Positions 12,506-26,985 of a DNA stretch of 64,000 nt are shown here, piece after piece. The notes below the pieces were generated by a model that saw nothing but the letters and a program-made list of their open reading frames with translations, made no database searches and was not told the origin of the DNA. How positions within the stretch are numbered: the first letter of the stretch is position 1; the number at the start of each line of letters is the position of its first letter. Made by a program: the position numbers and the translations under genes. Source of the stretch: Macrostomum lignano (taxonomy: Eukaryota); assembly GCA_002269645.1 (NCBI GenBank), contig NIVC01000399.1, positions 62,001 to 126,000 on the forward strand, given 5' to 3'.

Positions 12506-12904
12506 CAAGTTATTTTCAGCCTTTGCTAAAACTGTTTTTGTAGCTCAGTTCAGCTTTTCTGCTTAGCAAACAAAAATCATCAGAAAAAAAGACTTTGTTT
12601 AAACTTTCTTATAAAGCTTCAAAAATAGAAGCCGACGGCACATTGTACACTGAAATAACAGATAAAAAATCAGCAGGTATTATATTTTTGGCTTCTTGCC
12701 AGCATAAAAGTAGGTAAGGCAAAAGACTTTGTCAATAGTGAACTCATACAGAAGCTATTTTAGCACGTGATTCTTGCAGCGCAGCGATAAAACACTCGCT
12801 GATTTCGAAATTGCACTTGAAAAGTTTCTGCACTGTGAGAAAGTGCGATAAGAAATGGGTGCTTATTGAGAACTGATGGAGAAGAGAGCGGACTGGGGTT
12901 TGGA

Positions 12905-14090
12905 AAAGAAGCGGAAAAGGCAGCGGAGAAGAGAGCGGAGAAGAGAGCGGAGAAGAGAGCGGAGAAGAGAGCGGAGAAGAGAGCGGAGAAGAGAGCGGAG
13001 AAGAGAGCGGAGAAGAGAGCGGAGAAGAGAGCGGAGAAGGGAGCGGAGAAGAGAGCGGAGAAGAGTGCGGAGAAGAGAGCGGAGAAGAGAGCGGAGAAGA
13101 GAGCGGAGAAGGGAGAAGAGTGAGGAGAAGAGAGCGGAGAAGAGAGCGGAGAAGAGAGCAGAGAAGGGAGAAGAGTGCGGAGAAGAGAGCGGAGAAGAGT
13201 GCGGAGAAGAGTGCGGAGAAGAGAGCGGAGAAGGGAGAAGAGAGCAGAGAAGAGTGCGGAGAAGAGAGCGGAGAAGAGAGCGGAGAAGGGAGAAGAGTGA
13301 GGAGAAGAGTGCGGAGAAGAGAGCGGAGAAGGGAGAAGAGTGCGGAGAAGAAAGCGGAGAAGGGAGAAGAGTGAGGAGAAGAGTGCGGAGAAGAGAGCGG
13401 AGAAGGGAGAAGAGTGTGGAGAAGAGAGCGGAGAAGAGAGCGGAGAAGAGAGCGGAGAAGGGAGAAGAGAGCGGAGAAGAGAGCGGAGAAGGGAGAAGAG
13501 AGCGGAGAAGAGAGCGGAGAAGGGAGAAGAGAGCGGAGAAGAGAGCGGAGAAGAGAGCGGAGAAGAGAGCGGAGAAGGGAGAAGAGTGAGGAGAAGAGAG
13601 CGGAGAAGAGAGCGGAGAAGAGAGCGGAGAAGAGAGCGGAGAAGGGAGAAGAGTGAGGAGAAGAGAGTGGAGAAGAGAGCGGAGAAGAGAGCGGAGAAGA
13701 GTGCGGAGAAGAGAGCGGAGAAGAGAGCAGAGAAGAGTGCAGAGAAGAGTGCGGAGAAGAGAGCAAAGAAGGGAGAAGAGTGAGGAGAAGAGAGCGGAGA
13801 AGAGAGCGGAGAAGAGAGCGGAGAAGAGAGCGGAGAAGAGAGCGGAGAAGAGTGCGGAGAAGGGAGAAGAGTGAGGAGAAGAGAGCGGAGAAGAGAGCGG
13901 AGAAGAGAGCGGAGAAGAGAGCGGAGAAGAGAGCGGAGAAGAGAGCGGAGAAGAGAGAAGAGAAGAGTGCGGAGAAGAGTGCGGAGAAGAGAGCGGAGAA
14001 GAGAGCGGAGAAGAGAGCGGAGAAGAGAGCGGAGAAGAGTGCGGAGAAGAGAGCGGAGAAGAGAGCGAAGAAGGCAGCGGAGAAGGCAGT
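12905..14090. repeat. 12-bp minisatellite (gaagagagcgga)
   Basis: Visible. Confidence 0.97.
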
Positions 14091-14454
14091 AGATGCAAAA
14101 CCATGGGCTAAACCTATGCTTGGCAAATTTACAATGCAAAAAACTTAGTGCTGGCAAACTGGCATCACCCACCACGTGCTCGAGCGAGCAACTGTAGCCC
14201 TCAGCCGCCTGTACTCTGGAGCAAATACGGGCGTATGCGTGTTACCTTGGCATGAGAATACAATTTTCATTATTGATCCACGCACATCTAGGCACGCGCT
14301 GTTTCTATTTTTAGCTCCGACTGATGTGAAGCGTGCACGCGCTTGATGCATGATGGGGGTCTACAATGCTTCCAGTCTGCATAGCATTGAGAGTGCGGTA
14401 GAGGTTGGAGAGACTGGGGTGCGGTGTGTGACAGAAAATTGGGACAGATAAGTC

Positions 14455-15515
14455 ACATCAAAACCCATTCTGTCACCTCAGATCCCATTCTGTCACCTCA
14501 GATCCCATTCTGTCACCTCAGATCCCATTCTGTCACCTCAGAACCCATTCTGTCACCTCAAATCCCATTCTGTCACCTCAGATCCCATTCTGTCACCTCA
14601 GATCCCATTCTGTCACCTCAGATCCGATTCTGTCACCTCAGATCCCATTCTGTCACCTCAAAACCCATTCTGTCACCTCAAATCCCATTCTGTCACCTCA
14701 AATCCCATTCTGTCACCTCAAATTCCATTCTGTCACCTCAAATTCCATTCTGTCACCCTAAATCCCATTCTGTCACCTCAGATCCGATTCTGTCACCTCA
14801 GATCCCATTCTGTCACCTCAAAACCCATTCTGTCACCTCAGATCCCATTCTGTCACCTCAAAACCCATTCTGTCACCTCAAATCCCATTCTGTCACCTCA
14901 AATCCCATTCTGTCACCTCAAATTCCATTCTGTCACCTCAAATTCCATTCTGTCACCCTAAATCCCATTCTGTCACTTCAGATCCAATTCTGTCACTTCA
15001 GATCCCATTCTGTCACTTCAGATCCCATTCTGTCACCTCAAAACCCATTCTGTCACCTCAAAACCCATTCTGTCACCTCAAATCCCATTCTGTCACCTCA
15101 AATTCCATTCTGTCACCTCAAAACCCATTCTGTCACCTCAAAACCCATTCTGTCACCTCAAATCCCATTCTGTCACCTCAAATTCCATTCTGTCACCTCA
15201 AATTCCATTCTGTCACCCTAAATCCCATTCTGTCACTTCAGATCCCATTCTGTCACCTCAAATTCCATTCTGTGACCTCAAAACCCATTCTGTCACCTCA
15301 GATTTCATTCTGTCACTTCAGATCCCATTCTGTCACTTCAGATCCCATTCTGTCACCTCAGATCCCATTCTGTCACCTCAAAACCCATTCTGTCACCTCA
15401 GATCCCATTCTGTCACCTCAGATCCCATTCTGTCACCTCAGATCCCACTTCAGATCCCATTCTGTCACCTCAGATCCCACTTCAGATCCCATTCTGTCAC
15501 CTCAAATCCCATTCT
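14455..15515. repeat. 20-bp minisatellite (cccattctgtcacctcagat)
   Basis: Visible; runs into the TRPC acceptor at 15517. Confidence 0.97.
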
Positions 15516-15517
15516 AG

Positions 15518-15846
15518 CCAAACTCAGACGCCGCGGGAGCAAGCGATCAATGCAGAGCCGCAGATTCGGTCGCTTCGGAGGCTCAGGCCCCTCTTCAACA
15601 GTTTCCAATGCTTCAATTGGCACCAGCTTGGAGTCCCAACAGCCACCGCTGCAGCCTCCGCAGCCTCCAGTGCAGCAACCGCATCTCCAGAAAGAGGAGG
15701 TGACCCTGAATCCCAGCCGGCTAGCGTACACTTCGCTCGAGCCCATTGCCAATAAAAAAGTTTCATTTAGCTGGTCCTCGGACGCGGAACCAGCTGTGGA
15801 CAGCGGCGGGACCACAGGTGGAGTTCAGCGAAGCGACCTGGTGTGA
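15518..15846 (+). CDS. TRPC-like channel, terminal coding exon (TKLRRRGSKRSMQSRRFG...QRSDLV*)
   Basis: Acceptor cccattctag at 15517. The phase-1 junction from 10181 lands in the frame of ORF 15550-15846. The KLRRR.S..R basic stretch is typical of invertebrate TRP tails. Confidence 0.8.
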
Positions 15847-15899
15847 AAAGTAGCGTAATAAATCCCCCGTGATTAGCCGTTGAGTACTTGTACGTATTC

Positions 15900-18230
15900 G
15901 CCACACTAAATAGCGCCACACTAAATAGCGCCACACTAAATAGCGCCACACTAAATAGAGCGACACTAAATAGCGCCACACTAAATAGCACCACACTAAA
16001 TAGCGCCACACTAAATAGCGCCACACTAAATAGCGCCACACTAAATAGAGCAACACTAAATAGCGCCACACCGAATAGCGCCACACTAAATAGCGCCACA
16101 CTAAATAGAGCAACACTAAATAGCGCCACACCGAATAGCGCCACACTAAATAGCGCCACACTAAATAGAGCAACACTAAATAGCGCCACACCGAATAGCG
16201 CCACACTAAATAGCGCCACACTAAATAGCGCCACACTAAATAGCGCCACACTAAATAGCGCCACACTAAATAGCGCGACACTAAATAGCGCCACACCGAA
16301 TAGCACCACACTAAATAGCACCACACTAAATAGCACCACACTAAATAGCACCACACTAAATAACACCATCTATGAAATAGCTCCACACTAAATAGCGCGA
16401 CACTAAATAGCGCCACACCGAATAGCGCCACACTAAATAGCACCACACTAAATAGCGCCACACTAAATAGAGCAACACTAAATAGCGCCACACTAAATAG
16501 CGCCACACTAAATAGCGCCACACTAAATAGAGCAACACTAAATAGCGCCACACCGAATAGCGCCACACTAAATAGCGCCACACTAAATAGAGCAACACTA
16601 AATAGCGCAACACCGAATAGCGCCACACTAAATAGCGCCACACTAAATAGAGCAACACTAAATAGCGCCATCCGAATAGCGCCACACTAAATAGCGCCAC
16701 ACTAAATAGCACCACACTAAATAGCGCCATCTATGAAATAGCACCACACTAAATAGCACCACACTAAATAGCGCCACACTAAATAGCGCCACACTAAATA
16801 GCGCGACACTAAATAGCGCCACACCGAATAGCGCCACACTAAATAGCACCACACTAAATAGCACCACACTAAATAGCGCCATCTATGAAATAGCACCACA
16901 CTAAATAGCACCATCTATGAAATAGCACCACACTAAATAGCACCACACTAAATAGCGCCACACTAAATAGCGCCACACTAAATAGCGCCACACTAAATAG
17001 AGCCACACTAAATAGCGCCACACTAAATAGCACCACACTAAATAGAGCCACACTAAATAGCACCACACTAAATAGCACCACACTAAATAGCGCCATCTAT
17101 GAAATAGCGCCACACTAAATAGCGCCACACTAAATAGCGCCACACTAAATAGCGCCACATTAAATAGCGCCACACTAAATAGCGCGACACTAAATAGCGC
17201 CACACTAAATAGCGCCATCTATGAAATAGCGCCACACTAAATAGCGCCACACTAAATAGCGCCACACTAAATAGCACCACACTAAATAGCGCCATCTATG
17301 AAATAGCACCACACTAAATAGCGCCATCTATGAAATAGCACCACACTAAATAGCACCATCTATGAAATAGCACCACACTAAATAGCACCACACTAAATAG
17401 CGCCACACTAAATAGCGCCACACTAAATAGCGCCACACTAAATAGAGCCACACTAAATAGCGCCACACTAAATAGCACCACACTAAATAGAGCCACACTA
17501 AATAGCACCACACTAAATAGCACCACACTAAATAGCGCCATCTATGAAATAGCGCCACACTAAATAGCGCCACACTAAATAGCGCCACACTAAATAGCGC
17601 CACATTAAATAGCGCCACACTAAATAGCGCGACACTAAATAGCGCCACACTAAATAGCGCCATCTATGAAATAGCGCCACACTAAATAGCGCCACACTAA
17701 ATAGCGCCACACTAAATAGCGCCATCTATGAAATAGCTCCACACTAAATAGCACCACACTAAATAGCACCACACTAAATAGCGCCATCTATGAAATAGCG
17801 CCACACTAAATAGCGCCACACTAAATAGCGCCACACTAAATAGCGCCACATTAAATAGCGCCACACTAAATAGCGCGACACTAAATAGCGCCACACTAAA
17901 TAGCGCCATCTATGAAATAGCGCCACACTAAATAGCGCCACACTAAATAGCGCCACACTAAATAGCACCACACTAAATAGCACCACACTAAATAGCACCA
18001 TCTATGAAATAGCGCCACACTAAATAGCGCCACACTAAATAGCGCCACATTAAATAGCGCCACACTAAATAGCGCCACACTAAATAGCGCCACACTAAAT
18101 AGCGCCACACTAAATAGCGCCACACTAAATAGAGCCACACTAAATAGCACCACACTAAATAGCACCACACTAAATAGCGCCACACCAAATAGCATCATCC
18201 ATGAAGTAGCGCAATCCATGAAATAGCGCC
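15900..18230. repeat. 15-bp minisatellite (ccacactaaatagcg) with gcgccatctatg variants
   Basis: Visible. A 445-bp internal duplication is shown by identical ORFs at 16869 and 17314. Confidence 0.97.
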
Positions 18231-18764
18231 AGCCAGTTAAGGATGAGCAACTTTATTCACTCGTTATACAACTTTTAGCTTTTGCTTTTAAAAACGTTAC
18301 CATGTTACCATAGTTACCGTAGTTACCATAGTTACCGTAGAATTACCATAGTCGCAAAAGACACGCCCCGGCACACACACAAACCAGTGTACATAATTTA
18401 AAGAATTAGTTATACAAGCTACAGATTTTTTTCTATTCAGAAAGACTGATTAAAATGCGTTTTACAGTATAGAGCGAGGCGTCTGATAACTTGGTAATTG
18501 TCTTACTAATAATTATTTTATCTTTTATCTATATATAGGGATATGTACTAGAGTGAGATTAGAAAATTTTCTTAGTGCATTGTGCGCCAATTACTTAACA
18601 GAATCGACCACGTGACACTTGCGAACTGCGTCACTTTACTAATGAGCTGATTGTACCTGCTTCTTGCGTTCTGTCTGTGCTTAGCCGTGTGATTAGTTTT
18701 ACAGGTATTTGCTCTTGTCCTGTGTCAGTGCACCTAGCTCTGCACTCATTCACTAATGACCCTT

Positions 18765-19940
18765 TCTCTTTTCCCTTCTCCGCTCTCTCCTCCGCTCTGT
18801 CCTCCGCCCCCTTCTCTTTTCCCTTCTCCGCTCTCTCCTCCGCTCTGTCCTCCGCCCCTTCTCTTTTCACTTCTCCGCTCTCTCGTCCGCTCTCTTCTCC
18901 GCCCCCTTCTCTTCTCCCTTCTCCGCTCTCTCCTCCGTCTCCTCCGCCCCTTCTCTTTTCCCTTCTCCGCTCTCTCCTCCGCTCTCTCCTCCGCCCCTTC
19001 TCTTTTCCCTTCTCCGCTCTCTCGTCCGCTCTCTTCTCCGCCCCTTCTCTTCTCCCTTCTCCGCTCTCTCCTCCGCTCTCTCCTCCGCTCTCTCCTCCGC
19101 CCCTTCTCTTCTCCCTTCTCCGCTCTCTCCTCCGCTGCCTTCTCCGCTCTCTCCTCCGCTCTCTCCTCCGCTCTCTCCTCCGCTCTCTCATCCGCCCCTT
19201 CTCTTCTCCCTTCTCCGCTCTCTCGTCCGCTGCCTTCTCTTTTCCCTTCTCCGCTCTCTCGTCCGCTGCCTTCTCTTTTCTCTTCTTCGTTCTCTCCTCC
19301 GCTCTCTTCTCCGCCCCTTCTCTTCTCCCTTCTCCGCTCTCTCGTCCGCTCTCTTCTCCGCCCCCTTCTCTTCTCCCTTCTCCGCTCTCTCCTCCGCTCT
19401 CTCCTCCGCTCTCTCCTCCGCCCCTTCTCTTCTCCCTTCTCCGCTCTCTCCTCCGCTGCCTTCTCCGCTCTCTCCTCCGCTCTCTCCTCCGCTCTCTCCT
19501 CCGCTCTCTCCTCCGCCCCTTCTCTTCTCCCTTCTCCGCTCTCTCCTCCGCTGCCTTCTCTTCCTCATCCGCGCTCTACTCCGCTTCCTTTTCCAAACAC
19601 TTCTCTTCTCCCTTCTCCGCTCTCTCGTCCGCTCTCTTCTCCGCCCCCTTCTCTTCTCCCTTCTCCGCTCTCTCCTCCGCTCTCTCCTCCGCTCTCTCCT
19701 CCGCCCCTTCTCTTCTCCCTTCTCCGCTCTCTCCTCCGCTGCCTTCTCCGCTCTCTCCTCCGCTCTCTCCTCCGCTCTCTCCTCCGCTCTCTCCTCCGCC
19801 CCTTCTCTTCTCCCTTCTCCGCTCTCTCCTCCGCTGCCTTCTCTTCCTCATCCGCGCTCTACTCCGCTTCCTTTTCCAAACACTTCTCTTCTCCCTTCTC
19901 CGCTCCCCTCTCTGCTCTTTCTCTACTCTCTTCTCCGCTG
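18765..19940. repeat. 12-bp-based minisatellite (ctctcctccgct / cttctccgctct)
   Basis: Visible; reverse complement of the 12905-14090 family. Confidence 0.95.
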
Positions 19941-20904
19941 CCTTGTGACTGTAGAGTACGAAGCATACATAGTTATTATTTTCAATAATATATGTATTGT
20001 TCAAAAGTAAGTTTATTTGCACAACTCCTTGCGTACGTGTACTCTCCCAGACTCTCTGGAAACACTTGGCTGCGAACATGCCTCATCTGTACCGCTCGTA
20101 AACGCTTCAACTGCCTTAGCTTTTTGTCAGTGTGTCCAGCCTCTCAACTCCATCTGCTGTCCCTTTCTCACAAGTTATACAATACAGTCACAGAAAGCTT
20201 TCAATTATACAACGAAATAAATAAAATAAACAGCATTCGATTTATAAAATCGATATTTTATTTTTACAAAATAATTCCCATCGTTCAATAATATATATTT
20301 TTCAATAATTGTGATTGTGTATACCCATGCGTGTTTGTGCGCGCTTATCATTAATATTTTGAGCACATTCCACTTTCTGTAAGACAGAATTTCAAATCTG
20401 ATTTAGCATTGAATGCTTCCATACGGAAAAATGTACAGAAGATCAGAAAATCAAATTAATATTTACAATGATTGCGAAAAATCTTGGTTGGTACAGCGGG
20501 CATAGAATGGAAAAAATAGATCAATTAATTTCTTTAAACAACCAGGCAGACTTGATGAATGAGCAACAAGTCGAAGATGAAATTGTGCACAAGACTGGAA
20601 AAGTTACGGTGCCAAGCAGTGAATGAACTGAAAAAATGGCAACATGACTATTAATAATACAACATGAGCAATAAAATTAGGGCCTCCATGAATGAACTGA
20701 CTGGGTTTGAGTGTGAGACTGGTAAGGGAGCTTCATCATTGATTTCTGAGGTAGCTCTGGGCTTGCATGCAGTTCAAGACGCTCAGAAATTCCAACGTAA
20801 GATACGATAAGCACTTGACTGAGGACACAGAATGAAACAGGCTGCCTGCATTGGCTTGATTTACAGGCAAACAGACGGTGAAACAGAATGCTTTATACAG
20901 CAAG

Positions 20905-21160
<256 letters not shown>

Positions 21161-21196: not shown

Positions 21197-21835
21197 TCAG
21201 TGCAGCAGCACGATACAGGCGGACACCTCCTCGTTCTCCCAGTCGGCCTCGTTAAAGCCGGCCGCCGAGTCCCTGTGCCCGCAGCTCTCGGCCAGCTGCA
21301 CCAAAGTGGCCGCAAGATTTTCTCCGCTAGGATTCGAACCCTGGGACTGCGCCGCCAACAGCTGGCCGCCAACGCAGGCCACCGCCTGCTGGGGAGACAG
21401 CCGGTCCCACAGGCCGGGGCTTCCCAGGATGATAAAGCGGTCGGCGGCCGGGTCGATGCCCACCTCGATCACTTCCGGTCTGGCGGTCAGGTAGGGCGGC
21501 GTCTCGCAGCTCGGTGGCGACTGGCCGGCTGGCCAAGAAGTCCAAGAGTTCAGGCGCTCCTTCGGCCACTTCAACTGCACCAGGCCGAAGGCTCTGAGCG
21601 CCTCCATGCGGCCGAGGAGGCGGTTGCCGGCGAACACGGAGCCGCGCTCGGATGCCGGGTGCTCGGCCAGAACTCGTCGAACTTCCCGACCATTCTCAAT
21701 GGTCTGCTGGGCGAGCGGCTGCCGCCATCGCCAGGCCGTCTGGACATTGTTGACGCTGTCAGTGCCATCTTCGGCGTCGGAGGCAGCGGCGATGGCAGCA
21801 CTTCGAGAGCCAATCACGGCAGCGCTGTTGCCGAT
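21197..21835 (-). CDS. PDP-like PP2C, terminal exon (IGNSAAVIG...RLLGRMEALRAFGLVQLKW...TPPYLTARPEV...IILGSPGLWD...EEVSACIVLLH*)
   Basis: RLLG..P.RAFGD..FKW and TPPYLTAEPEV are diagnostic of pyruvate dehydrogenase phosphatase. Acceptor tttcag at 21836; 639 nt, phase 0. Confidence 0.9.
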   Translation of the reverse strand: MGNSAAVIGSRSAAIAAASDAEDGTDSVNNVQTAWRWRQPLAQQTIENGREVRRVLAEHPASERGSVFAGNRLLGRMEALRAFGLVQLKWPKERLNSWTSWPAGQSPPSCETPPYLTARPEVIEVGIDPAADRFIILGSPGLWDRLSPQQAVACVGGQLLAAQSQGSNPSGENLAATLVQLAESCGHRDSAAGFNEADWENEEVSACIVLLH

Positions 21836-21944
21836 CTGAAATTGTTCAATATCGTATCATTTTTCTCTAATCTGCCGATATTTTGGGTAAATAACTTTCT
21901 ATGATGATATTTATAATCTGGAAGTTGTCAAATAAGTAAAATAA

Positions 21945-22285
21945 CTACTATCTACCGATATGTAGCGATAGTAAGTTTTTATAATCAGATTTCTAAATTC
22001 CAACAGTGTTAATAATATTTATTGGACTCTTATCTACCGATATGTAGCGATAGTTTTTTATAATCATATTTCTAAATTCCAACAGTGTTAATAATATTTA
22101 ATGGACTCTTATCTACCGACATGTAGCAATACCAAGTTTTTTTAATGAGATTTTTAAATTCCAACAGTTTTTAATTTATAAAGGATTCCTATCTACCGAT
22201 ATGTAGCGATAGTAAGTTTTATAATGAGATTTTTTAATTTCAACAATTTTTAATGCATAAAAGATTTCTATCTACCGATATGAAG
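21945..22285. repeat. Diverged ~80-bp AT-rich tandem repeat
   Basis: tctaccga recurs at about 21951, 22033, 22112, 22192, 22271. Confidence 0.85.
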
Positions 22286-22328
22286 TGTTTAATAACTTTA
22301 CTCAGCCAATTTAGTCAAAAATCTTTAC

Positions 22329-23330
22329 CTGCATCAAGCAGCACCGGCTCCCGTCGCCAGAGATCAGACAGGCGGATCCCACGGCACCCGTGGTGGCTGC
22401 CCGCAGAGTCCAGGCCGACTGCCCAGCCGCGCCGCACAGATCCGCATCCAGCCTGATCATGGCCTGGCACAGTCGGTCCGCAGTTGTGCAATCGGCGTCG
22501 GGCTGGGAATTTGCCGCCCGCAGCAGCCTGTCGGTCAGCCAGTCGGCCTTGGCCATGGAGACCAGGTCCTCGGGCACGAACTGGCCGCTGCCGGGCCGCC
22601 GAAGGGACACCGCCGGGACGTCCGCGTTGCCATCGACGGCAGCAGCGTCTTCGCCCGGACTGTGACTATTACTGCAGCAGTCCTCGTTGTCGCTCCAGTC
22701 GAACTGTCTGAGCAGACTTCTCCGAGCGTCGCGAGCTTCAATCGGCGAATTTGAAGCCAACTCGGCCGCGGCGTAGTCCGCCGCCAGAGCCGCCACCGCC
22801 GCGGCGCACTGCCGACCGCCGACGCCGACAAATAGACCGGCGAATGTCGATGAGCTTCGGGTCAGTCTGGCCGCTGTCCATTCCGATGAGGCAACGGAGT
22901 CTGGGGAGACGCTGCCGCCCGACGCTGCTGGCCGGCAGGCCGAGTGCACCCTGCCGCAGTCGGTGGTCTCCTGCTGAATCGGCAAGCCGACAGGCGGCCA
23001 TCTGGGAGCCGCCGACATGGGCGACGGTGGCGAAGCTGACGGAGAGCCGTTTGGGGTGCAGCTCTTCGCCAGAGCCGGGCAGTGGCTGTCATTGCTGCTT
23101 CCAGAAGCAGTAGCGTTAGCCGAATTAGTGAGGACGCGGTGCTGGCTGATGCAGTTCTGCGGTAGAGACTGGGCTCGAGTCCTGCTGCTCGGCTTTGAGC
23201 AGTCTGAGGGTCGGGCCCTGGCTGCTGCCGGTGAGTTGGGCTCCGTAGCTGGTCCGCTCTGCTCCTGCTTCTGCTGCTGGTTGTAACTGCGGCCTTTTTG
23301 ACAATTGACAGGTTGATGGGCGTTGGAAGG
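22329..23330 (-). CDS. PDP-like PP2C (probable pseudophosphatase), large exon; 5' boundary uncertain (first in-frame ATG at 23018)
   Basis: AGLFVGVGGRQCAAAV aligns to PDP LGVFDGHAGCACSQAV, and RLDADL...TGAVGSACLI to RLDNDI...SGATACVAHV. Donor CAG|gtaaag at 22328; frame open to the AG at 23331-23332. Confidence 0.8.
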
Positions 23331-23434
23331 CTAATTGAATGTTTTCAGGTTGAGATATTCAGTTTCAAAACCTTTCACTATTTATTCTAGGAACTAAGCA
23401 TGTTCTCTATAGTCATTGTACGAGCTATTCTTCG

Positions 23435-24075
23435 ACCTTCCAATCCTACCTATCTACTTTCCACTCTACCTTTCTACCTTCCAATCTACCTATCTACTTT
23501 CCACTCTACCTTTCTACCTTCCAATCTACCTATCTACTTTCCACTCTACCTTTCTACCTTCCAATCTACCTATCTACTTTCCACTCTACCTTTCTACCTT
23601 CCAATCTACCTATCTACTTTCCACTCTACCTTTCTACCTTCCAATCTACCTATCTACTTTCCACTCTACCTTTCTACCTTCCAATCTACTTCTCTACTTT
23701 CCACTCTACCTATCTACTTTCAACTCTACCTTTCTACCTTCCAATCTACCTATCTACTTTACACTCTACCTTTCTACCTTCCAATCTACCTATCTACTTT
23801 CCACTCTACCTTTCTACCTTCCAATCTACTTCTCTACTTTCCAATCTACCTATCTACTTTCAACTCTACCTTTCTACCTTCCAATCTACCTATCTACTTT
23901 CCACTCTACCTTTCTACCTTCCAATCTACCTATCTACTTTCCACTCTACCTTTCTACCTTCCAATCTACCTATCTACTTTTCACTCTACCTCTCTATCTT
24001 CCAATCTACTTCTCGATCTATCTTCCACTCTACCTCTCTCTCTACCTCCCACTCTACCTTTCTCTCTACCTCCCA
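23435..24075. repeat. 40-bp minisatellite (ccaatctacctatctactttccactctacctttctacctt)
   Basis: Visible. Confidence 0.95.
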
Positions 24076-24120
24076 CTGTACCCCTCGCAGCAAGAATATC
24101 AATTATCTGCTCATGCTCAC

Positions 24121-24157
24121 CCAAAGCCGAGTACAGTAGACAGCTGAGCATCTTCAT
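24121..24157 (-). CDS. Candidate upstream micro-exon (MKMLSCLLYSAL) of the PDP-like transcript
   Basis: ATG preceded by a possible acceptor (caacag) and followed by a good donor G|gtgagc, but phase 1 is out of frame with the PDP reading frame. Confidence 0.3.
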
Positions 24158-24749
24158 CGCCGCTGTTGTATTGTACTCAATTTTTGAGTAAATTTAAAAA
24201 TCCAATGAAAAAATTCTAAGACTGAAAATACAATTGAATGGCTAGTATATTCAGTGTTCTAATTTCAATCTAATCTGTTTGAAAAAACTACAGATTAATC
24301 AAAAAAATAATCCTTACGGATGTCTAGAAAAAAATTCTTCTAAAAAAGTTTTAGAAGCAACAGCCTTTCTCAGTTGAGAGTCTCGACTCGGTTGAACTGC
24401 AACTTTAGGGTGCCGGCCGATTATACATTTAGATATAATAGCATTTGCTAACCCCAAGCCGCCCACATAACACGCGGGCAGACTGGGGGTGACACCAAGC
24501 TAGTCTGGCTTTGTCCCTATTGGCTGCAGAAGAAATCACGTGCGCTAGAGGGCACAGGGACAGTCGGAGGCGGCCTGTTGAAGAATTCATGCCAAATTGT
24601 ACTTTTATTTTCTCTTCTGCAGCGGTGCAGCGGAATCCACGATTATGTCTGTATTGACTTTAAACAATTGACATTAGCGTAGCCTGCCTCGTGACATGGC
24701 TAAACATGTCAATCTTTTATTGCCAGCCGCCACCTGCAGCTTTCTCTCG

Positions 24750-26985
24750 TGTCTGCTGTGCTATCTCTCATTAATATCTCCCTATCGTCTCCTTCACATC
24801 TCCCTCATGTGTCTGCTGTGCTATCTCTCATTAATATCTCCCTATCGTCTCCTTCACATCTCCCTCACGTGTCTGCTGTGCTGTCTCTCATTAATATCTC
24901 CCTATCGTCTCCTTCACATCTCCCTCACGTGTCTGCTGTGCTATCTCTCATTAATATCTCCCTATCGTCTCCTTCACATCTCCCTCATGTGTCTGCTGTG
25001 CTATCTCTCATTAATATCTCCCTATCGTCTCCTTCACATCTCCCTCATGTGTCTGCTGTGCTATCTCTCATTAATATCTCCCTATCGTCTCCTTCACATC
25101 TCCCTCACGTGTCTGCTGTGCTATCTCTCATTAATATCTCCCTATCGTCTCCTTCACATCTCCCTCATGTGTCTGCTGTGCTATCTCTCATTAATATCTC
25201 CCTATCGTCTCCTTCACATCTCCCTCATGTGTCTGCTGTGCTATCTCTCATTAATATCTCCCTATCGTCTCCTTCACATCTCCCTTATGTGTCTGCTGTG
25301 CTGTCTCTCATTAATATCTCCCTATCGTCTCCTTCACATCTCCCTCACGTGTCTGCTGTGCTGTCTCTCATTATTATCTCCCTATCGTCTCCTTCACATC
25401 TCCCTCAAGTGTCTGCTGTGCTGTCTCTCATTATTATCTCCCTATCGTCTCCTTCACATCTTCCTCAAGTGTCTGCTGTGCTGTCTCTCATTAATATCTC
25501 CCTATCGTCTCCTTCACATCTTCCTCAAGTGTCTGCTGTGCTGTCTCTCATTAATATCTCCCTATCGTCTCCTTCACATCTCCCTCACGTGTCTGCTGTG
25601 CTATCTCTCATTAATATCTCCCTATCGTCTCCTTCACATCTCCCTCACGTGTCTGCTGTGCTGTCTCTCATTAATATCTCCCTATCGTCTCCTTCACATC
25701 TCCCTCACGTGTCTGCTGTGCTGTCTCTCATTATTATCTCCCTATCGTCTCCTTCACATCTCCCTCACGTGTCTGCTGTGCTGTCTCTCATTATTATCTC
25801 CCTATCGTCTCCTTCACATCTCCCTCAAGTGTCTGCTGTGCTGTCTCTCATTAATATCTCCCTATCGTCTCCTTCACATCTCCCTCACGTGTCTGCTGTG
25901 CTGTCTCTCATTAATATCTCCCTATCGTCTCCTTCACATCTCCCTCACGTGTCTGCTGTGCTGTCTCTCATTATTATCTCCCTATCGTCTCCTTCACATC
26001 TCCCTCAAGTGTCTGCTGTGCTGTCTCTCATTATTATCTCCCTATCGTCTCCTTCACATCTTCCTCAAGTGTCTGCTGTGCTGTCTCTCATTAATATCTC
26101 CCTATCGTCTCCTTCACATCTTCCTCAAGTGTCTGCTGTGCTGTCTCTCATTAATATCTCCCTATCGTCTCCTTCACATCTCCCTCACGTGTCTGCTGTG
26201 CTGTCTCTCATTAATATCTCCCTATCGTCTCCTTCACATCTTCCTTATGTGTCTGCTGTGCTATCTCTCATTAATATCTCCCTATCGTCTCCTTCACATC
26301 TCCCTCACGTGTCTGCTGTGCTGTCTCTCATTAATATCTCCCTATCGTCTCCTTCACATCTTCCTTATGTGTCTGCTGTGCTATCTCTCATTAATATCTC
26401 CCTATCGTCTCCTTCACATCTCCCTCACGTGTCTGCTGTGCTATCTCACGTGTCTCCCTCAAGTCTCTCCCTCACATCTCTCCCTCAAGTCTATCACTTA
26501 CGTCTCCCTCACATCTCTCTCACGTCTCCCTTACGTCTCTCCCTCACGTCTCTCCCTCCGTCTCTCCCTCACGTCTCCCTCACGTCTCTCCCTCACATCT
26601 CTCCCTCATGTCTCTCCCTCCGTCTCTCCCTCACGTCTCTCCCTCACGTCTCCCTCACGTCTCCCTCACGTCTCTCTCACGTCTCTCCCTCACGTCTCTC
26701 CCTCACATCTCTCCCTCACGTCTCTCTCACTTCTCTCTCTCACGTCTCCGTCACATCTCTCCCTCACATCTCTCCCTCTCGTCTCTCCCTTACGTCTCTC
26801 CCTCTCGTCTCTCCCTTACGTCTCTCCCTCTCGTCTCTCCCTTACGTCTCTCCCTCACATCTCTCCCTCACGTCTCTCTCTCACGTCTCTCCCTCACGTC
26901 TCTCCCTCACATCTCTCCCTCACGTCTCCCTCACATCTCTCCCTCACGTCTCCCTCACATCTCTCCCTCACGTCTCTCCCTCACA
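24750..26985. repeat. 60-bp minisatellite (about 28 copies) grading into an 11-13-bp subunit array after ~26445
   Basis: Successive 60-nt lines are near-identical; explains the 770- and 820-aa ORFs. Confidence 0.98.

What the first reader, a model, noticed from the sequence alone, without database searches (positions are those of the whole stretch)
21197..23330. Pyruvate dehydrogenase phosphatase paralog lacking all metal-binding aspartates
Seen, by eye alignment to PDP1/2: EDRR becomes SSEW, FDGH becomes FVGV, GD becomes GN, AFGD becomes AFGL, ATDGLW becomes GSPGLW, and DDIT becomes EEVS. PDP scaffold motifs (RLLG, RAFG, KW, TPPYLTAxPEV) are kept, the frame is open for over 1.6 kb and splice sites are intact. 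Established: PPM/PP2C catalysis needs these Asp residues, and TAB1 is the known PPM pseudophosphatase. Inference: a maintained catalytically dead PDP-like protein acting as scaffold, dominant-negative or substrate trap.
Basis: partly seen in the sequence, partly recalled or inferred. Interest (0 to 1): 0.72.

Follow-up and report, generated by a model that had tools for sequence, protein, structure and literature searches.

The report
Catalytically dead flatworm PDP paralog

Summary
The window is Macrostomum lignano DNA. On the minus strand lies a three-exon gene (24157-24121, 23293-22329, 21835-21197) whose 546-aa product is exactly NCBI PAA83868.1, "hypothetical protein BOX15_Mlig008876g1".

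- **Family:** It passes Pfam PP2C. Its best solved relatives are PDP1 structures, by sequence (E 4e-17) and by predicted fold (E 3e-22).
- **Origin:** It shares a phase-0 intron position with Schistosoma PDP.
- **Active site:** All nine conserved catalytic columns of the PDP family are replaced. In PPM1A numbering these are E37/D38 to S/S or a gap, D60V, H62V, D146N, D199L, D239P, D282E and N283-position D to E. By contrast, 40 of 53 other conserved columns are kept (Fisher p 2.5e-5). None of 68 other PDP-family proteins lacks the metal ligands.
- **Active paralog:** M. lignano also has a canonical PDP with an intact site.
- **Selection:** Three genomic copies exist. dN/dS between them is 0.08-0.19 (14 synonymous versus 6 non-synonymous changes, p 3e-5).
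- **Transcription:** The source annotation was built from RNA-seq.
- **Distribution:** No ortholog outside M. lignano appeared among 1.84 billion representative proteins.

It is therefore a maintained PDP-derived pseudophosphatase. Partner, location and role are not established. This is a new member of a known kind (TAB1, PHLPP) and of moderate interest.

The parts
24121..24157 (-). Coding exon 1 (37 nt; MKMLSCLLYSAL + first base of G13), donor GG|GTGAGC
   Evidence: Joining it to exon 2 reproduces NCBI PAA83868.1 exactly.
23294..24120 (-). Intron 1 (827 nt, 40% GC), mostly a 40-bp tandem repeat (23431-24039)
   Evidence: It is 891 nt in copy L001.
22329..23293 (-). Coding exon 2 (965 nt). It holds the S/P/A/Q-rich N-terminal extension, internal Met105 (23018), degenerate motif I, degenerate motif II, the diverged PDP insert, and the beta strands up to ...CCLMQ.
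22869..22895 (-). VASSEWTAA (aa 146-154): replaces the PxEDR motif (PPM1A E37/D38)
22815..22835 (-). LFVGVGG (aa 166-172): replaces FDGHGG. The bridging metal ligand D60 is now V168 and the general acid H62 is now V170.
22584..22700 (-). Acidic, Cys-rich insert (aa 211-249) in the PDP-specific insert region, predicted disordered
   Evidence: (pLDDT below 50 for residues 106-143 of the 442-aa numbering).
21836..22328 (-). Intron 2 (493 nt, 26% GC, phase 0), mostly a 79-bp tandem repeat. Its position and phase are identical to an intron of Schistosoma PDP.
21197..21835 (-). Coding exon 3 (639 nt including the TGA stop at 21197-21199): the best-conserved half of the PP2C domain
21815..21835 (-). 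IGNSAAV (aa 335-341): GD[SC] becomes GNS (PPM1A D146 to N337)
21566..21622 (-). RLLGRMEALRAFGLVQLKW (aa 406-424): the scaffold is kept, RAFGD becomes RAFGL (PPM1A D199 to L419)
21470..21502 (-). TPPYLTARPEV (aa 446-456): PDP-subfamily signature at the end of the flap, retained
21404..21427 (-). LGSPGLWD (aa 471-478): metal ligand D239 becomes P474, and the D243 equivalent (D478) is retained
21215..21241 (-). WENEEVSAC (aa 533-541): RDDIT becomes NEEVS (PPM1A D282 to E536). The protein ends ...IVLLH, like the canonical M. lignano PDP (...VLLLH).

Best explanation
This is a transcribed, selectively maintained pseudophosphatase. It arose by DNA-level duplication of a flatworm pyruvate dehydrogenase phosphatase (PDP, PPM/PP2C fold).

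Shown here:
- It keeps the PDP fold and the flap/core motifs.
- It has lost the binuclear-metal ligands, the general-acid His and its Asp partner, so the canonical PPM hydrolysis mechanism cannot operate.
- An intact PDP paralog exists in the same genome.
- Recent evolution of the three copies is constrained.

Inferred: it works by binding rather than catalysis, through the conserved flap and former active-site face. My committed guess, at a probability of about 0.3, is that it still engages the PDP system and so damps or tunes reactivation of the pyruvate dehydrogenase complex. It could do this by occupying phospho-E1alpha or by pairing with the active PDP. About equally likely (about 0.3) is that the module now binds an unrelated partner outside mitochondria, as TAB1 does.

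The confidence given below refers to the shown part: a maintained, catalytically dead PDP derivative.
For: - **Identity:** The Pfam PP2C score is 51.2 bits against a cut-off of 20.3.
- **Closest structures by sequence:** The best PDB sequence hits are PDP1 at E 4e-17. The next family scores 7e-3.
- **Predicted fold:** AF2 with a 70-sequence alignment gives pLDDT 78.9 and pTM 0.82. Its best fold matches are PDP1 structures at E 3e-22 and TM 0.66-0.77, ten orders of magnitude ahead of other PP2Cs.
- **Tree:** An NJ tree places it beside the flatworm PDPs, with bootstrap 64.
- **Shared intron:** A phase-0 intron at LMQ|IGNS matches AAQ|VGDC in Schistosoma PDP.
- **Dead site:** D60V, H62V, D146N, D199L, D239P, D282E and loss of E37/D38. 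That is 9 of 9 catalytic columns lost against 13 of 53 others (p 2.5e-5). No acidic residue lies within 8 residues of the V168 position, and the nearest to P474 is the retained D478 (the D243 equivalent), four residues downstream; this can be read directly from the sequence.
- **Maintenance:** Three loci have intact cores. dN/dS is 0.14 (14 synonymous, 6 non-synonymous, p 3e-5) and 0.08-0.19 pairwise. There are no indels in the CDS between the window and L001, against 17 gap openings in about 3.3 kb of flanking and intronic DNA. The CDS is 66% GC and introns are 26-40% GC.
- **Transcription:** My gene model equals NCBI PAA83868.1. That annotation was built only from RNA-seq (StringTie/TACO/TBONE; PMC5730564).
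- **Active paralog:** It is present as three copies (Mlig021355g1 and others) with all motifs intact.
Against: - No enzymatic, expression-level or localisation data for this gene were found.
- The selection test rests on only 20 substitutions between very recent copies. Gene conversion could blur it, and it says nothing about the long branch.
- No ortholog in another species could be found, so long-term conservation is unproven.
- The AF2 model is driven by an alignment of canonical PDPs. The single-sequence model was uninformative (pLDDT 36).
- Against a PDC-linked role in particular, three points. The N-terminus is not a typical presequence: 2 basic residues in the first 20, against 5 in the canonical PDP. 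The PDP insert region proposed to hold the lipoyl group is the least conserved and is predicted disordered. The conserved C-terminal PDP segment is largely lost.
- The true start codon is ambiguous. Copy L001 has Lys at Met105, and copy L002 has a 1-nt deletion that puts the upstream ATG out of frame.
Confidence: 0.8

Rival explanations
1. It is a re-purposed binding module unrelated to pyruvate dehydrogenase. After losing catalysis, the PDP-derived domain acquired a new partner in the cytosol or nucleus and acts as a scaffold or adaptor, as TAB1 does for TAK1/p38. This shares the 'pseudophosphatase' verdict and differs only in the partner.
For: The N-terminal 130 aa are S/P/A/Q-rich low complexity rather than an Arg-rich presequence. 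A new 39-aa acidic, Cys-rich disordered insert is present. The lipoyl-pocket region and the C-terminal PDP segment are strongly diverged. Identity to any PDP is about 30%.
Against: The PDP-specific flap signature TPPYLTAxPEV and the RLLG...RAFG...KW block are kept at 42% identity. That is easiest to explain if an ancestral interaction surface is still in use. There are no data on partners.
Confidence: 0.3
2. It is a non-functional duplicate on its way to becoming a pseudogene. It is still open only because too little time has passed.
For: It is found in a single species so far. One copy (L002) has a 1-nt deletion in the N-terminal extension. The genome is a recent polyploid with much redundancy (PMC5730564).
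Against: The protein has diverged to about 30% identity from every PDP, yet it keeps a 1641-nt reading frame, both splice sites and 40 of 53 non-catalytic conserved columns. There is an excess of synonymous changes in all three pairwise comparisons. The L002 deletion lies in a CCCC run of a PacBio-based assembly and leaves the PP2C-like core intact.
Confidence: 0.07
3. It is still an enzyme that uses a non-canonical site, for example metal held by E536/E537/D478/E150, or a different chemistry.
For: Three acidic residues remain near the former site: E536, E537 and D478, the equivalent of PPM1A D243. Several 'pseudo' enzymes have later been found to be active.
Against: The ligand that bridges both metals (D60) is Val and D239 is Pro. 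The general-acid pair H62/D199 is Val/Leu. The only nearby acidic replacement is the retained D478 (the D243 equivalent), four residues from P474; none lies near V168. Established PPM1A mutagenesis shows that single changes at these positions abolish activity. TAB1 and PHLPP2, which have milder losses, are inactive (PMC12002173).
Confidence: 0.04
4. The PP2C-like region is not a separate gene but the C-terminal part of the upstream FAT-like cadherin, as in UniProt model A0A1I8IUH5.
For: That model joins cadherin tail exons (window 37513-33855) to the first PDP-like exon in another frame, using an acceptor 7 nt downstream.
Against: The cadherin's last exon runs into a stop codon (...FFKDMTV*) that the fusion model has to skip. 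The RNA-seq-based NCBI annotation keeps the two genes apart at two of the three loci, and the third locus is annotated from the internal Met. M. lignano is known to produce polycistronic precursors that are resolved by trans-splicing.
Confidence: 0.03

Closest known systems
Canonical pyruvate dehydrogenase phosphatases: mammalian PDP1/PDP2 (PDB 2PNQ, 3MQ3, 6V0T) and the M. lignano PDP (PAA93896.1, Mlig021355g1)
   Same: PP2C fold with PDP-specific features: RLLG...RAFG...KW, the TPPYLTAxPEV flap end, and the ...LLH C-terminus shared with the M. lignano PDP. These are the best sequence and fold matches, and one intron position is shared with Schistosoma PDP.
   Different: All catalytic residues are replaced. 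Identity is about 30%. The N-terminus is low complexity instead of an Arg-rich presequence. There is a new disordered acidic insert. The conserved C-terminal NAATHLIR...RDDIT segment is largely lost.
TAB1 (TAK1-binding protein 1), the classic PPM-fold pseudophosphatase
   Same: A PP2C fold without phosphatase activity because metal ligands are lost. It acts as a binding and activating subunit. This comes from established knowledge and PMC12002173. TAB1 structures are matched at fold level (2J4O, E 3e-10).
   Different: It belongs to a different PPM subfamily and arose independently. TAB1 is conserved across metazoans and still binds one Mn2+ at the M2 site. The protein here has lost the M1/M2 bridging Asp and the D239 equivalent, and it is known from one species only.
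PHLPP1/PHLPP2
   Same: PPM-domain proteins recently shown (PHLPP2) to be pseudophosphatases with a degenerate metal site (PMC12002173).
   Different: They are multidomain (PH, LRR) and ancient, having lost activity at the base of the metazoans. PHLPP2 binds a single Zn2+. They are unrelated to PDP.
Inactive myotubularins (MTMR5/9/13) that pair with active paralogs
   Same: This is only a mechanistic analogy from established knowledge: a dead paralog that regulates its active sibling by heterodimerising with it. PDP1c is known to dimerise (PMC12146199).
   Different: The fold is different (PTP superfamily), and no evidence for heterodimerisation exists here.

Membership tests
PPM/PP2C fold (Pfam PF00481) | Significant match to the PP2C profile above the curated cut-off | tested here: met
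   51.2 bits against a cut-off of 20.3, E 1.8e-13. Only the C-terminal 60% of the profile matches. The fold model matches many PP2C structures.
PDP subfamily of PPM | Closer to PDP1/2 than to any other PPM, by sequence and by fold | tested here: met
   PDP1 scores E 4e-17 against 7e-3 for the next family. Foldseek gives E 3e-22 against 3e-12. The best non-self hits of the exhaustive HMMER search that were named or inspected (roughly 70 of the 150 listed) are PDPs, with no non-PDP PP2C among them.
PDP subfamily of PPM | PDP signature motifs (RLLG, RAFG, KW, TPPYLTAxPEV) | tested here: met
   All are present.
PDP subfamily of PPM | Shared gene structure with a PDP gene | tested here: met
   The phase-0 intron before the GD[SC]/GNS motif is shared with Schistosoma PDP. 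It is not shared with the M. lignano canonical PDP, which lacks that intron.
PDP subfamily of PPM | Mitochondrial matrix targeting presequence | tested here: inconclusive
   The first 20 residues have 2 basic and 0 acidic residues, against 5 basic in the canonical M. lignano PDP. No dedicated predictor was available and the start codon is ambiguous.
PDP subfamily of PPM | Dephosphorylates PDC E1alpha and binds the E2 lipoyl domain | not testable with these tools
   Needs biochemistry.
Catalytically active PPM phosphatase | Binuclear metal ligands (PPM1A D60, D239, D282, with E37/D38 through water) | tested here: not met
   They are V168, P474, E536, and S/S or a gap.
Catalytically active PPM phosphatase | General acid His62 and its partner Asp199; third-metal Asp146 | tested here: not met
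   They are V170, L419 and N337. Only the D243 equivalent (D478) remains.
Pseudophosphatase (pseudoenzyme) | Homologous to an active enzyme, lacks catalytic residues, yet is maintained by selection and expressed | tested here: met
   Homology and residue loss are shown as above. dN/dS is 0.08-0.19 between three copies. The gene model is RNA-seq-derived. Actual absence of activity was not tested.
TAB1 family | Orthology to TAB1 (closest PPM subfamily, C-terminal TAK1/p38-binding regions) | tested here: not met
   TAB1 ranks far below PDP1 in fold search (E 3e-10 against 3e-22) and is absent from the sequence hits. The resemblance is functional only.

The most novel reading that the evidence does not exclude
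A PDP-derived pseudophosphatase that regulates the pyruvate dehydrogenase complex without catalysis. It could do so by shielding phospho-E1alpha, competing for the E2 lipoyl domain, or heterodimerising with the active PDP. This would be the first pseudoenzyme layer described in PDC control. It could be tested in a flatworm model that has RNAi and transgenesis.
Probability: 0.2. Interest if true: 0.6.

Novelty: new member of a known kind. Interest (0 to 1): 0.4.

Why it matters
Pseudoenzymes derived from PPM phosphatases are few: TAB1 and, since 2025, PHLPP. None derived from the PDP subfamily turned up in the searchable literature. The public records label this protein only as 'hypothetical protein' or 'PPM-type phosphatase domain-containing protein', so automated pipelines would count it as a phosphatase.

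If it still docks on the pyruvate dehydrogenase system, it would add a non-catalytic regulator to a central metabolic switch. If it does not, it is a clean example of a metabolic phosphatase fold being re-used as a binding module. M. lignano has RNAi, in situ hybridisation and transgenesis, so both readings can be tested.

The limits are clear. The gene is known from one species, nothing is known about its function, and loss of catalytic residues in a duplicated enzyme is a common evolutionary outcome.

Tried and rejected
- **Retrocopy origin.** I considered this because none of the three introns of the M. lignano canonical PDP is present. I rejected it because intron 2 sits at the same position and phase as an intron of Schistosoma PDP.
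- **Single-sequence AlphaFold2.** It gave pLDDT 36 and was uninformative. Only the alignment-based model was used.
- **Orthologs.** The word-indexed search and the exhaustive HMMER search found nothing closer than about 37% identity outside M. lignano. A cross-species dN/dS or branch test was therefore impossible.
- **Expression or phenotype data.** The three gene identifiers occur in no searchable full text. They also do not occur in the supplements of four M. lignano papers. A fifth paper had no supplements held.
- **PDP1 structure papers.** They were wanted for ligand numbering and the lipoyl pocket, but are not held. I used PPM1A numbering instead, with a sequence recalled from memory. Its Asp/His positions agree with the published residue numbers. 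Treat this mapping as a consistency check.
- **Rfam.** It found no RNA family in the window.
- **Fusion with the upstream cadherin (UniProt A0A1I8IUH5).** I judged it a prediction artefact or a polycistronic precursor.
Apart from the retained D478 (the D243 equivalent, a third-metal ligand) four residues from P474, there are no acidic residues near the V168 and P474 positions.
Full report
**What is there**

[quoted passage not shown] The spliced product of the locus is 99% identical to NCBI 'hypothetical protein BOX15_Mlig012261g1'. My three-exon model is an exact match to PAA83868.1, BOX15_Mlig008876g1.

The gene lies on the minus strand:
- Exon 1 is 24157-24121, with donor GG|GTGAGC.
- Exon 2 is 23293-22329.
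- Exon 3 is 21835-21197, including the stop codon.

The coding sequence is 66% GC (GC3 76%). The two introns are 40% and 26% GC and consist largely of tandem repeats.

**Checking the observation**

Pfam finds a PP2C domain at 51.2 bits against a cut-off of 20.3. The best solved relatives by sequence are PDP1 structures at E 4e-17. The next PPM family reaches only 7e-3.

- PxEDR becomes ASSEW.
- FDGHGG becomes FVGVGG.
- GD[SC] becomes GNS.
- RAFGD becomes RAFGL.
- [ST]DGLW becomes SPGLW.
- RDDIT becomes NEEVS.

RLLG, RAFG, KW and TPPYLTAxPEV are kept.

The losses map onto PPM1A numbering as follows. The PPM1A sequence was recalled from memory, and its Asp/His positions agree with the published residue numbers.

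| PPM1A residue | Residue here |
|---|---|
| E37/D38 | lost (S/S or a gap) |
| D60 | V168 |
| H62 | V170 |
| D146 | N337 |
| D199 | L419 |
| D239 | P474 |
| D243 | D478 (retained) |
| D282 | E536 |

Of 62 columns that are at least 85% conserved in the family, the protein keeps 40. All nine catalytic columns are among the 22 it lost (Fisher p 2.5e-5). None of the 68 other family members lacks a metal ligand. No acidic residue lies close to V168, and the only one close to P474 is the retained D478, so the 'shifted ligand' escape does not apply.

**Is it a real, maintained gene?**

The Mlig_3_7 assembly holds three copies: the window, L001 and L002. This fits the species' recent genome duplication.
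- Window versus L001 shows 14 synonymous and 6 non-synonymous differences. That gives dS 0.035, dN 0.005 and omega 0.14, with binomial p 3e-5. The other two pairs give omega 0.08 and 0.19. Allowing for transition bias weakens this result but does not remove it.
- The coding sequence has no indel between the window and L001, whereas the surrounding 3.3 kb has 17 gap openings. Many of those gaps lie in repeats.
- Copy L002 has a 1-nt deletion in a CCCC run at CDS position 278. This puts the upstream ATG out of frame, so that copy is annotated from the internal Met105.
- Copy L001 has Lys at position 105 and needs the upstream start. The true N-terminus is therefore uncertain.
- The NCBI annotation of this assembly was derived only from RNA-seq, using StringTie, TACO and TBONE (PMC5730564). 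The existence of these models is therefore indirect evidence of transcription and of the splice pattern.
- No paper or supplement that I could search mentions the three gene identifiers.

**Origin**

M. lignano also has a canonical PDP, again in three copies. It has all catalytic motifs, an Arg-rich presequence and the same unusual ...LLH C-terminus.

The dead protein is about 30% identical to it and to every other PDP. A neighbour-joining tree puts it next to the flatworm PDPs with weak support (bootstrap 64).

Its second intron is phase 0, between Q334 and I335 of LMQ|IGNS. An intron of Schistosoma PDP sits at exactly the same aligned position and phase (AAQ|VGDC). The canonical M. lignano gene has no intron there, and its three introns are absent from the dead gene. 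The gene therefore descends from a flatworm PDP by DNA-level duplication and is not a retrocopy.

No ortholog outside M. lignano exists among 5.8 billion 90%-identity protein clusters or 1.84 billion representatives. Other macrostomids may simply be unsampled.

**Structure**

With a 70-sequence alignment, AlphaFold2 gives pLDDT 78.9 and pTM 0.82. Disordered stretches are at residues 1-21, 32-38 and 106-143 of the 442-aa numbering. Foldseek puts PDP1 structures first at E 3e-22 and TM 0.66-0.77. Other PP2Cs follow from E 3e-12, and TAB1 scores 3e-10. The alignment consists mostly of canonical PDPs, so this is essentially a homology model.

Conservation is uneven:
- The blocks EVxRxxxEHP...RLLG...RAFG...KW and TPPYLTA...GLWD...helix are about 42% identical to family members.
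- The PDP-specific insert region is about 12% identical. This region has been proposed to hold the lipoyl group (PMC12146199).
- The C-terminal segment is about 18% identical.

**Mechanism**

Shown: the canonical binuclear-metal PPM mechanism cannot operate, and the protein is nevertheless kept.

Established knowledge: PPM catalysis needs these Asp ligands. The milder cases TAB1 and PHLPP2 are inactive (PMC12002173).

Inferred: the protein acts by binding. I commit, at about 0.3, to a role within the PDP system. In that reading it occupies phospho-E1alpha or pairs with the active PDP, and so tunes reactivation of the pyruvate dehydrogenase complex. The flap and near-site surfaces are what has been preserved, and PDP1c is known to dimerise. 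About equally likely is a new, non-mitochondrial partner. The atypical N-terminus and the loss of the lipoyl-pocket and C-terminal segments point that way.

Less likely readings are a drifting duplicate (0.07), residual non-canonical activity (0.04) and a cadherin fusion (0.03).

**Comparison and verdict**

By sequence, fold and gene structure the protein is a member of the PDP subfamily. It fails the test for an active PPM enzyme. It works like TAB1 or PHLPP, as a PPM-fold pseudophosphatase, but it is not a member of those families.

I found no report of a PDP-derived pseudophosphatase. The public records call the protein only 'hypothetical' or 'PPM-type phosphatase domain-containing'. I rate it a new member of a known kind, with interest 0.4.

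Noticed in passing
window 21836-22328 (intron 2); L004 6914-13756; L003 4840-5406: The phase-0 intron before the GNS motif is at the same position and phase as an intron of Schistosoma PDP. It is absent from the canonical M. lignano PDP gene, whose own three introns are absent here. This implies differential intron loss after a DNA-level duplication.
   Followed up: yes
window 23431-24039 and 21944-22282: Both introns of the gene are built mainly of tandem repeats (40-bp and 79-bp units). Copy number differs between gene copies: intron 2 is 493 nt here and 251 nt in L001.
   Followed up: partly
window 20906-21157: A (CAGA)63 microsatellite begins about 40 nt downstream of the stop codon, probably inside the 3' UTR.
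   Followed up: no
window 24744-26984: A 60-bp unit repeated 28 times at 97% identity, followed by a 13-bp array, lies just upstream of the gene's first exon. Further CT-rich arrays are at 19012-19944.
   Followed up: no
window ~33860-54456, minus strand: A FAT-like cadherin gene lies upstream, with a Cadherin domain hit in ORF 53206-54456 and tail exons at 37513-33855. Its last exon ends ...FFKDMTV*. UniProt model A0A1I8IUH5, oddly named 'Protein grainyhead', skips this stop. It fuses the tail through a tiny exon at about 32023 to the PDP-like exon 1 in another frame, using an acceptor 7 nt downstream (cag|TTACAAC). This is probably an artefact or a polycistronic precursor.
   Followed up: partly
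L002 (NIVC01001748.1), CDS position 278; L001 codon 105: Copy L002 has a 1-nt deletion in a CCCC run, which frameshifts the N-terminal extension. Copy L001 has AAG (Lys) where the other two copies have the internal ATG. No single start codon therefore serves all three copies as assembled.
   Followed up: partly
P0019 (Glossina PDP-like), P0056, P0111 in alignment A1: A few other PDP-family proteins have lost non-ligand catalytic residues while keeping the metal ligands. The D199 equivalent is Asn in all three, the D146 equivalent is Gly in the Glossina protein, and the H62 equivalent is Asn in P0111. These may be weakened or partly degenerate PDP paralogs.
   Followed up: no
window 15763-16671, minus strand: A 302-aa ORF has a weak LisH motif hit (E 1.8e-5). 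The region 12721-19641 is 97.7% identical to L001, which is higher than the neighbouring DNA, yet no gene is annotated there in L001.
   Followed up: no
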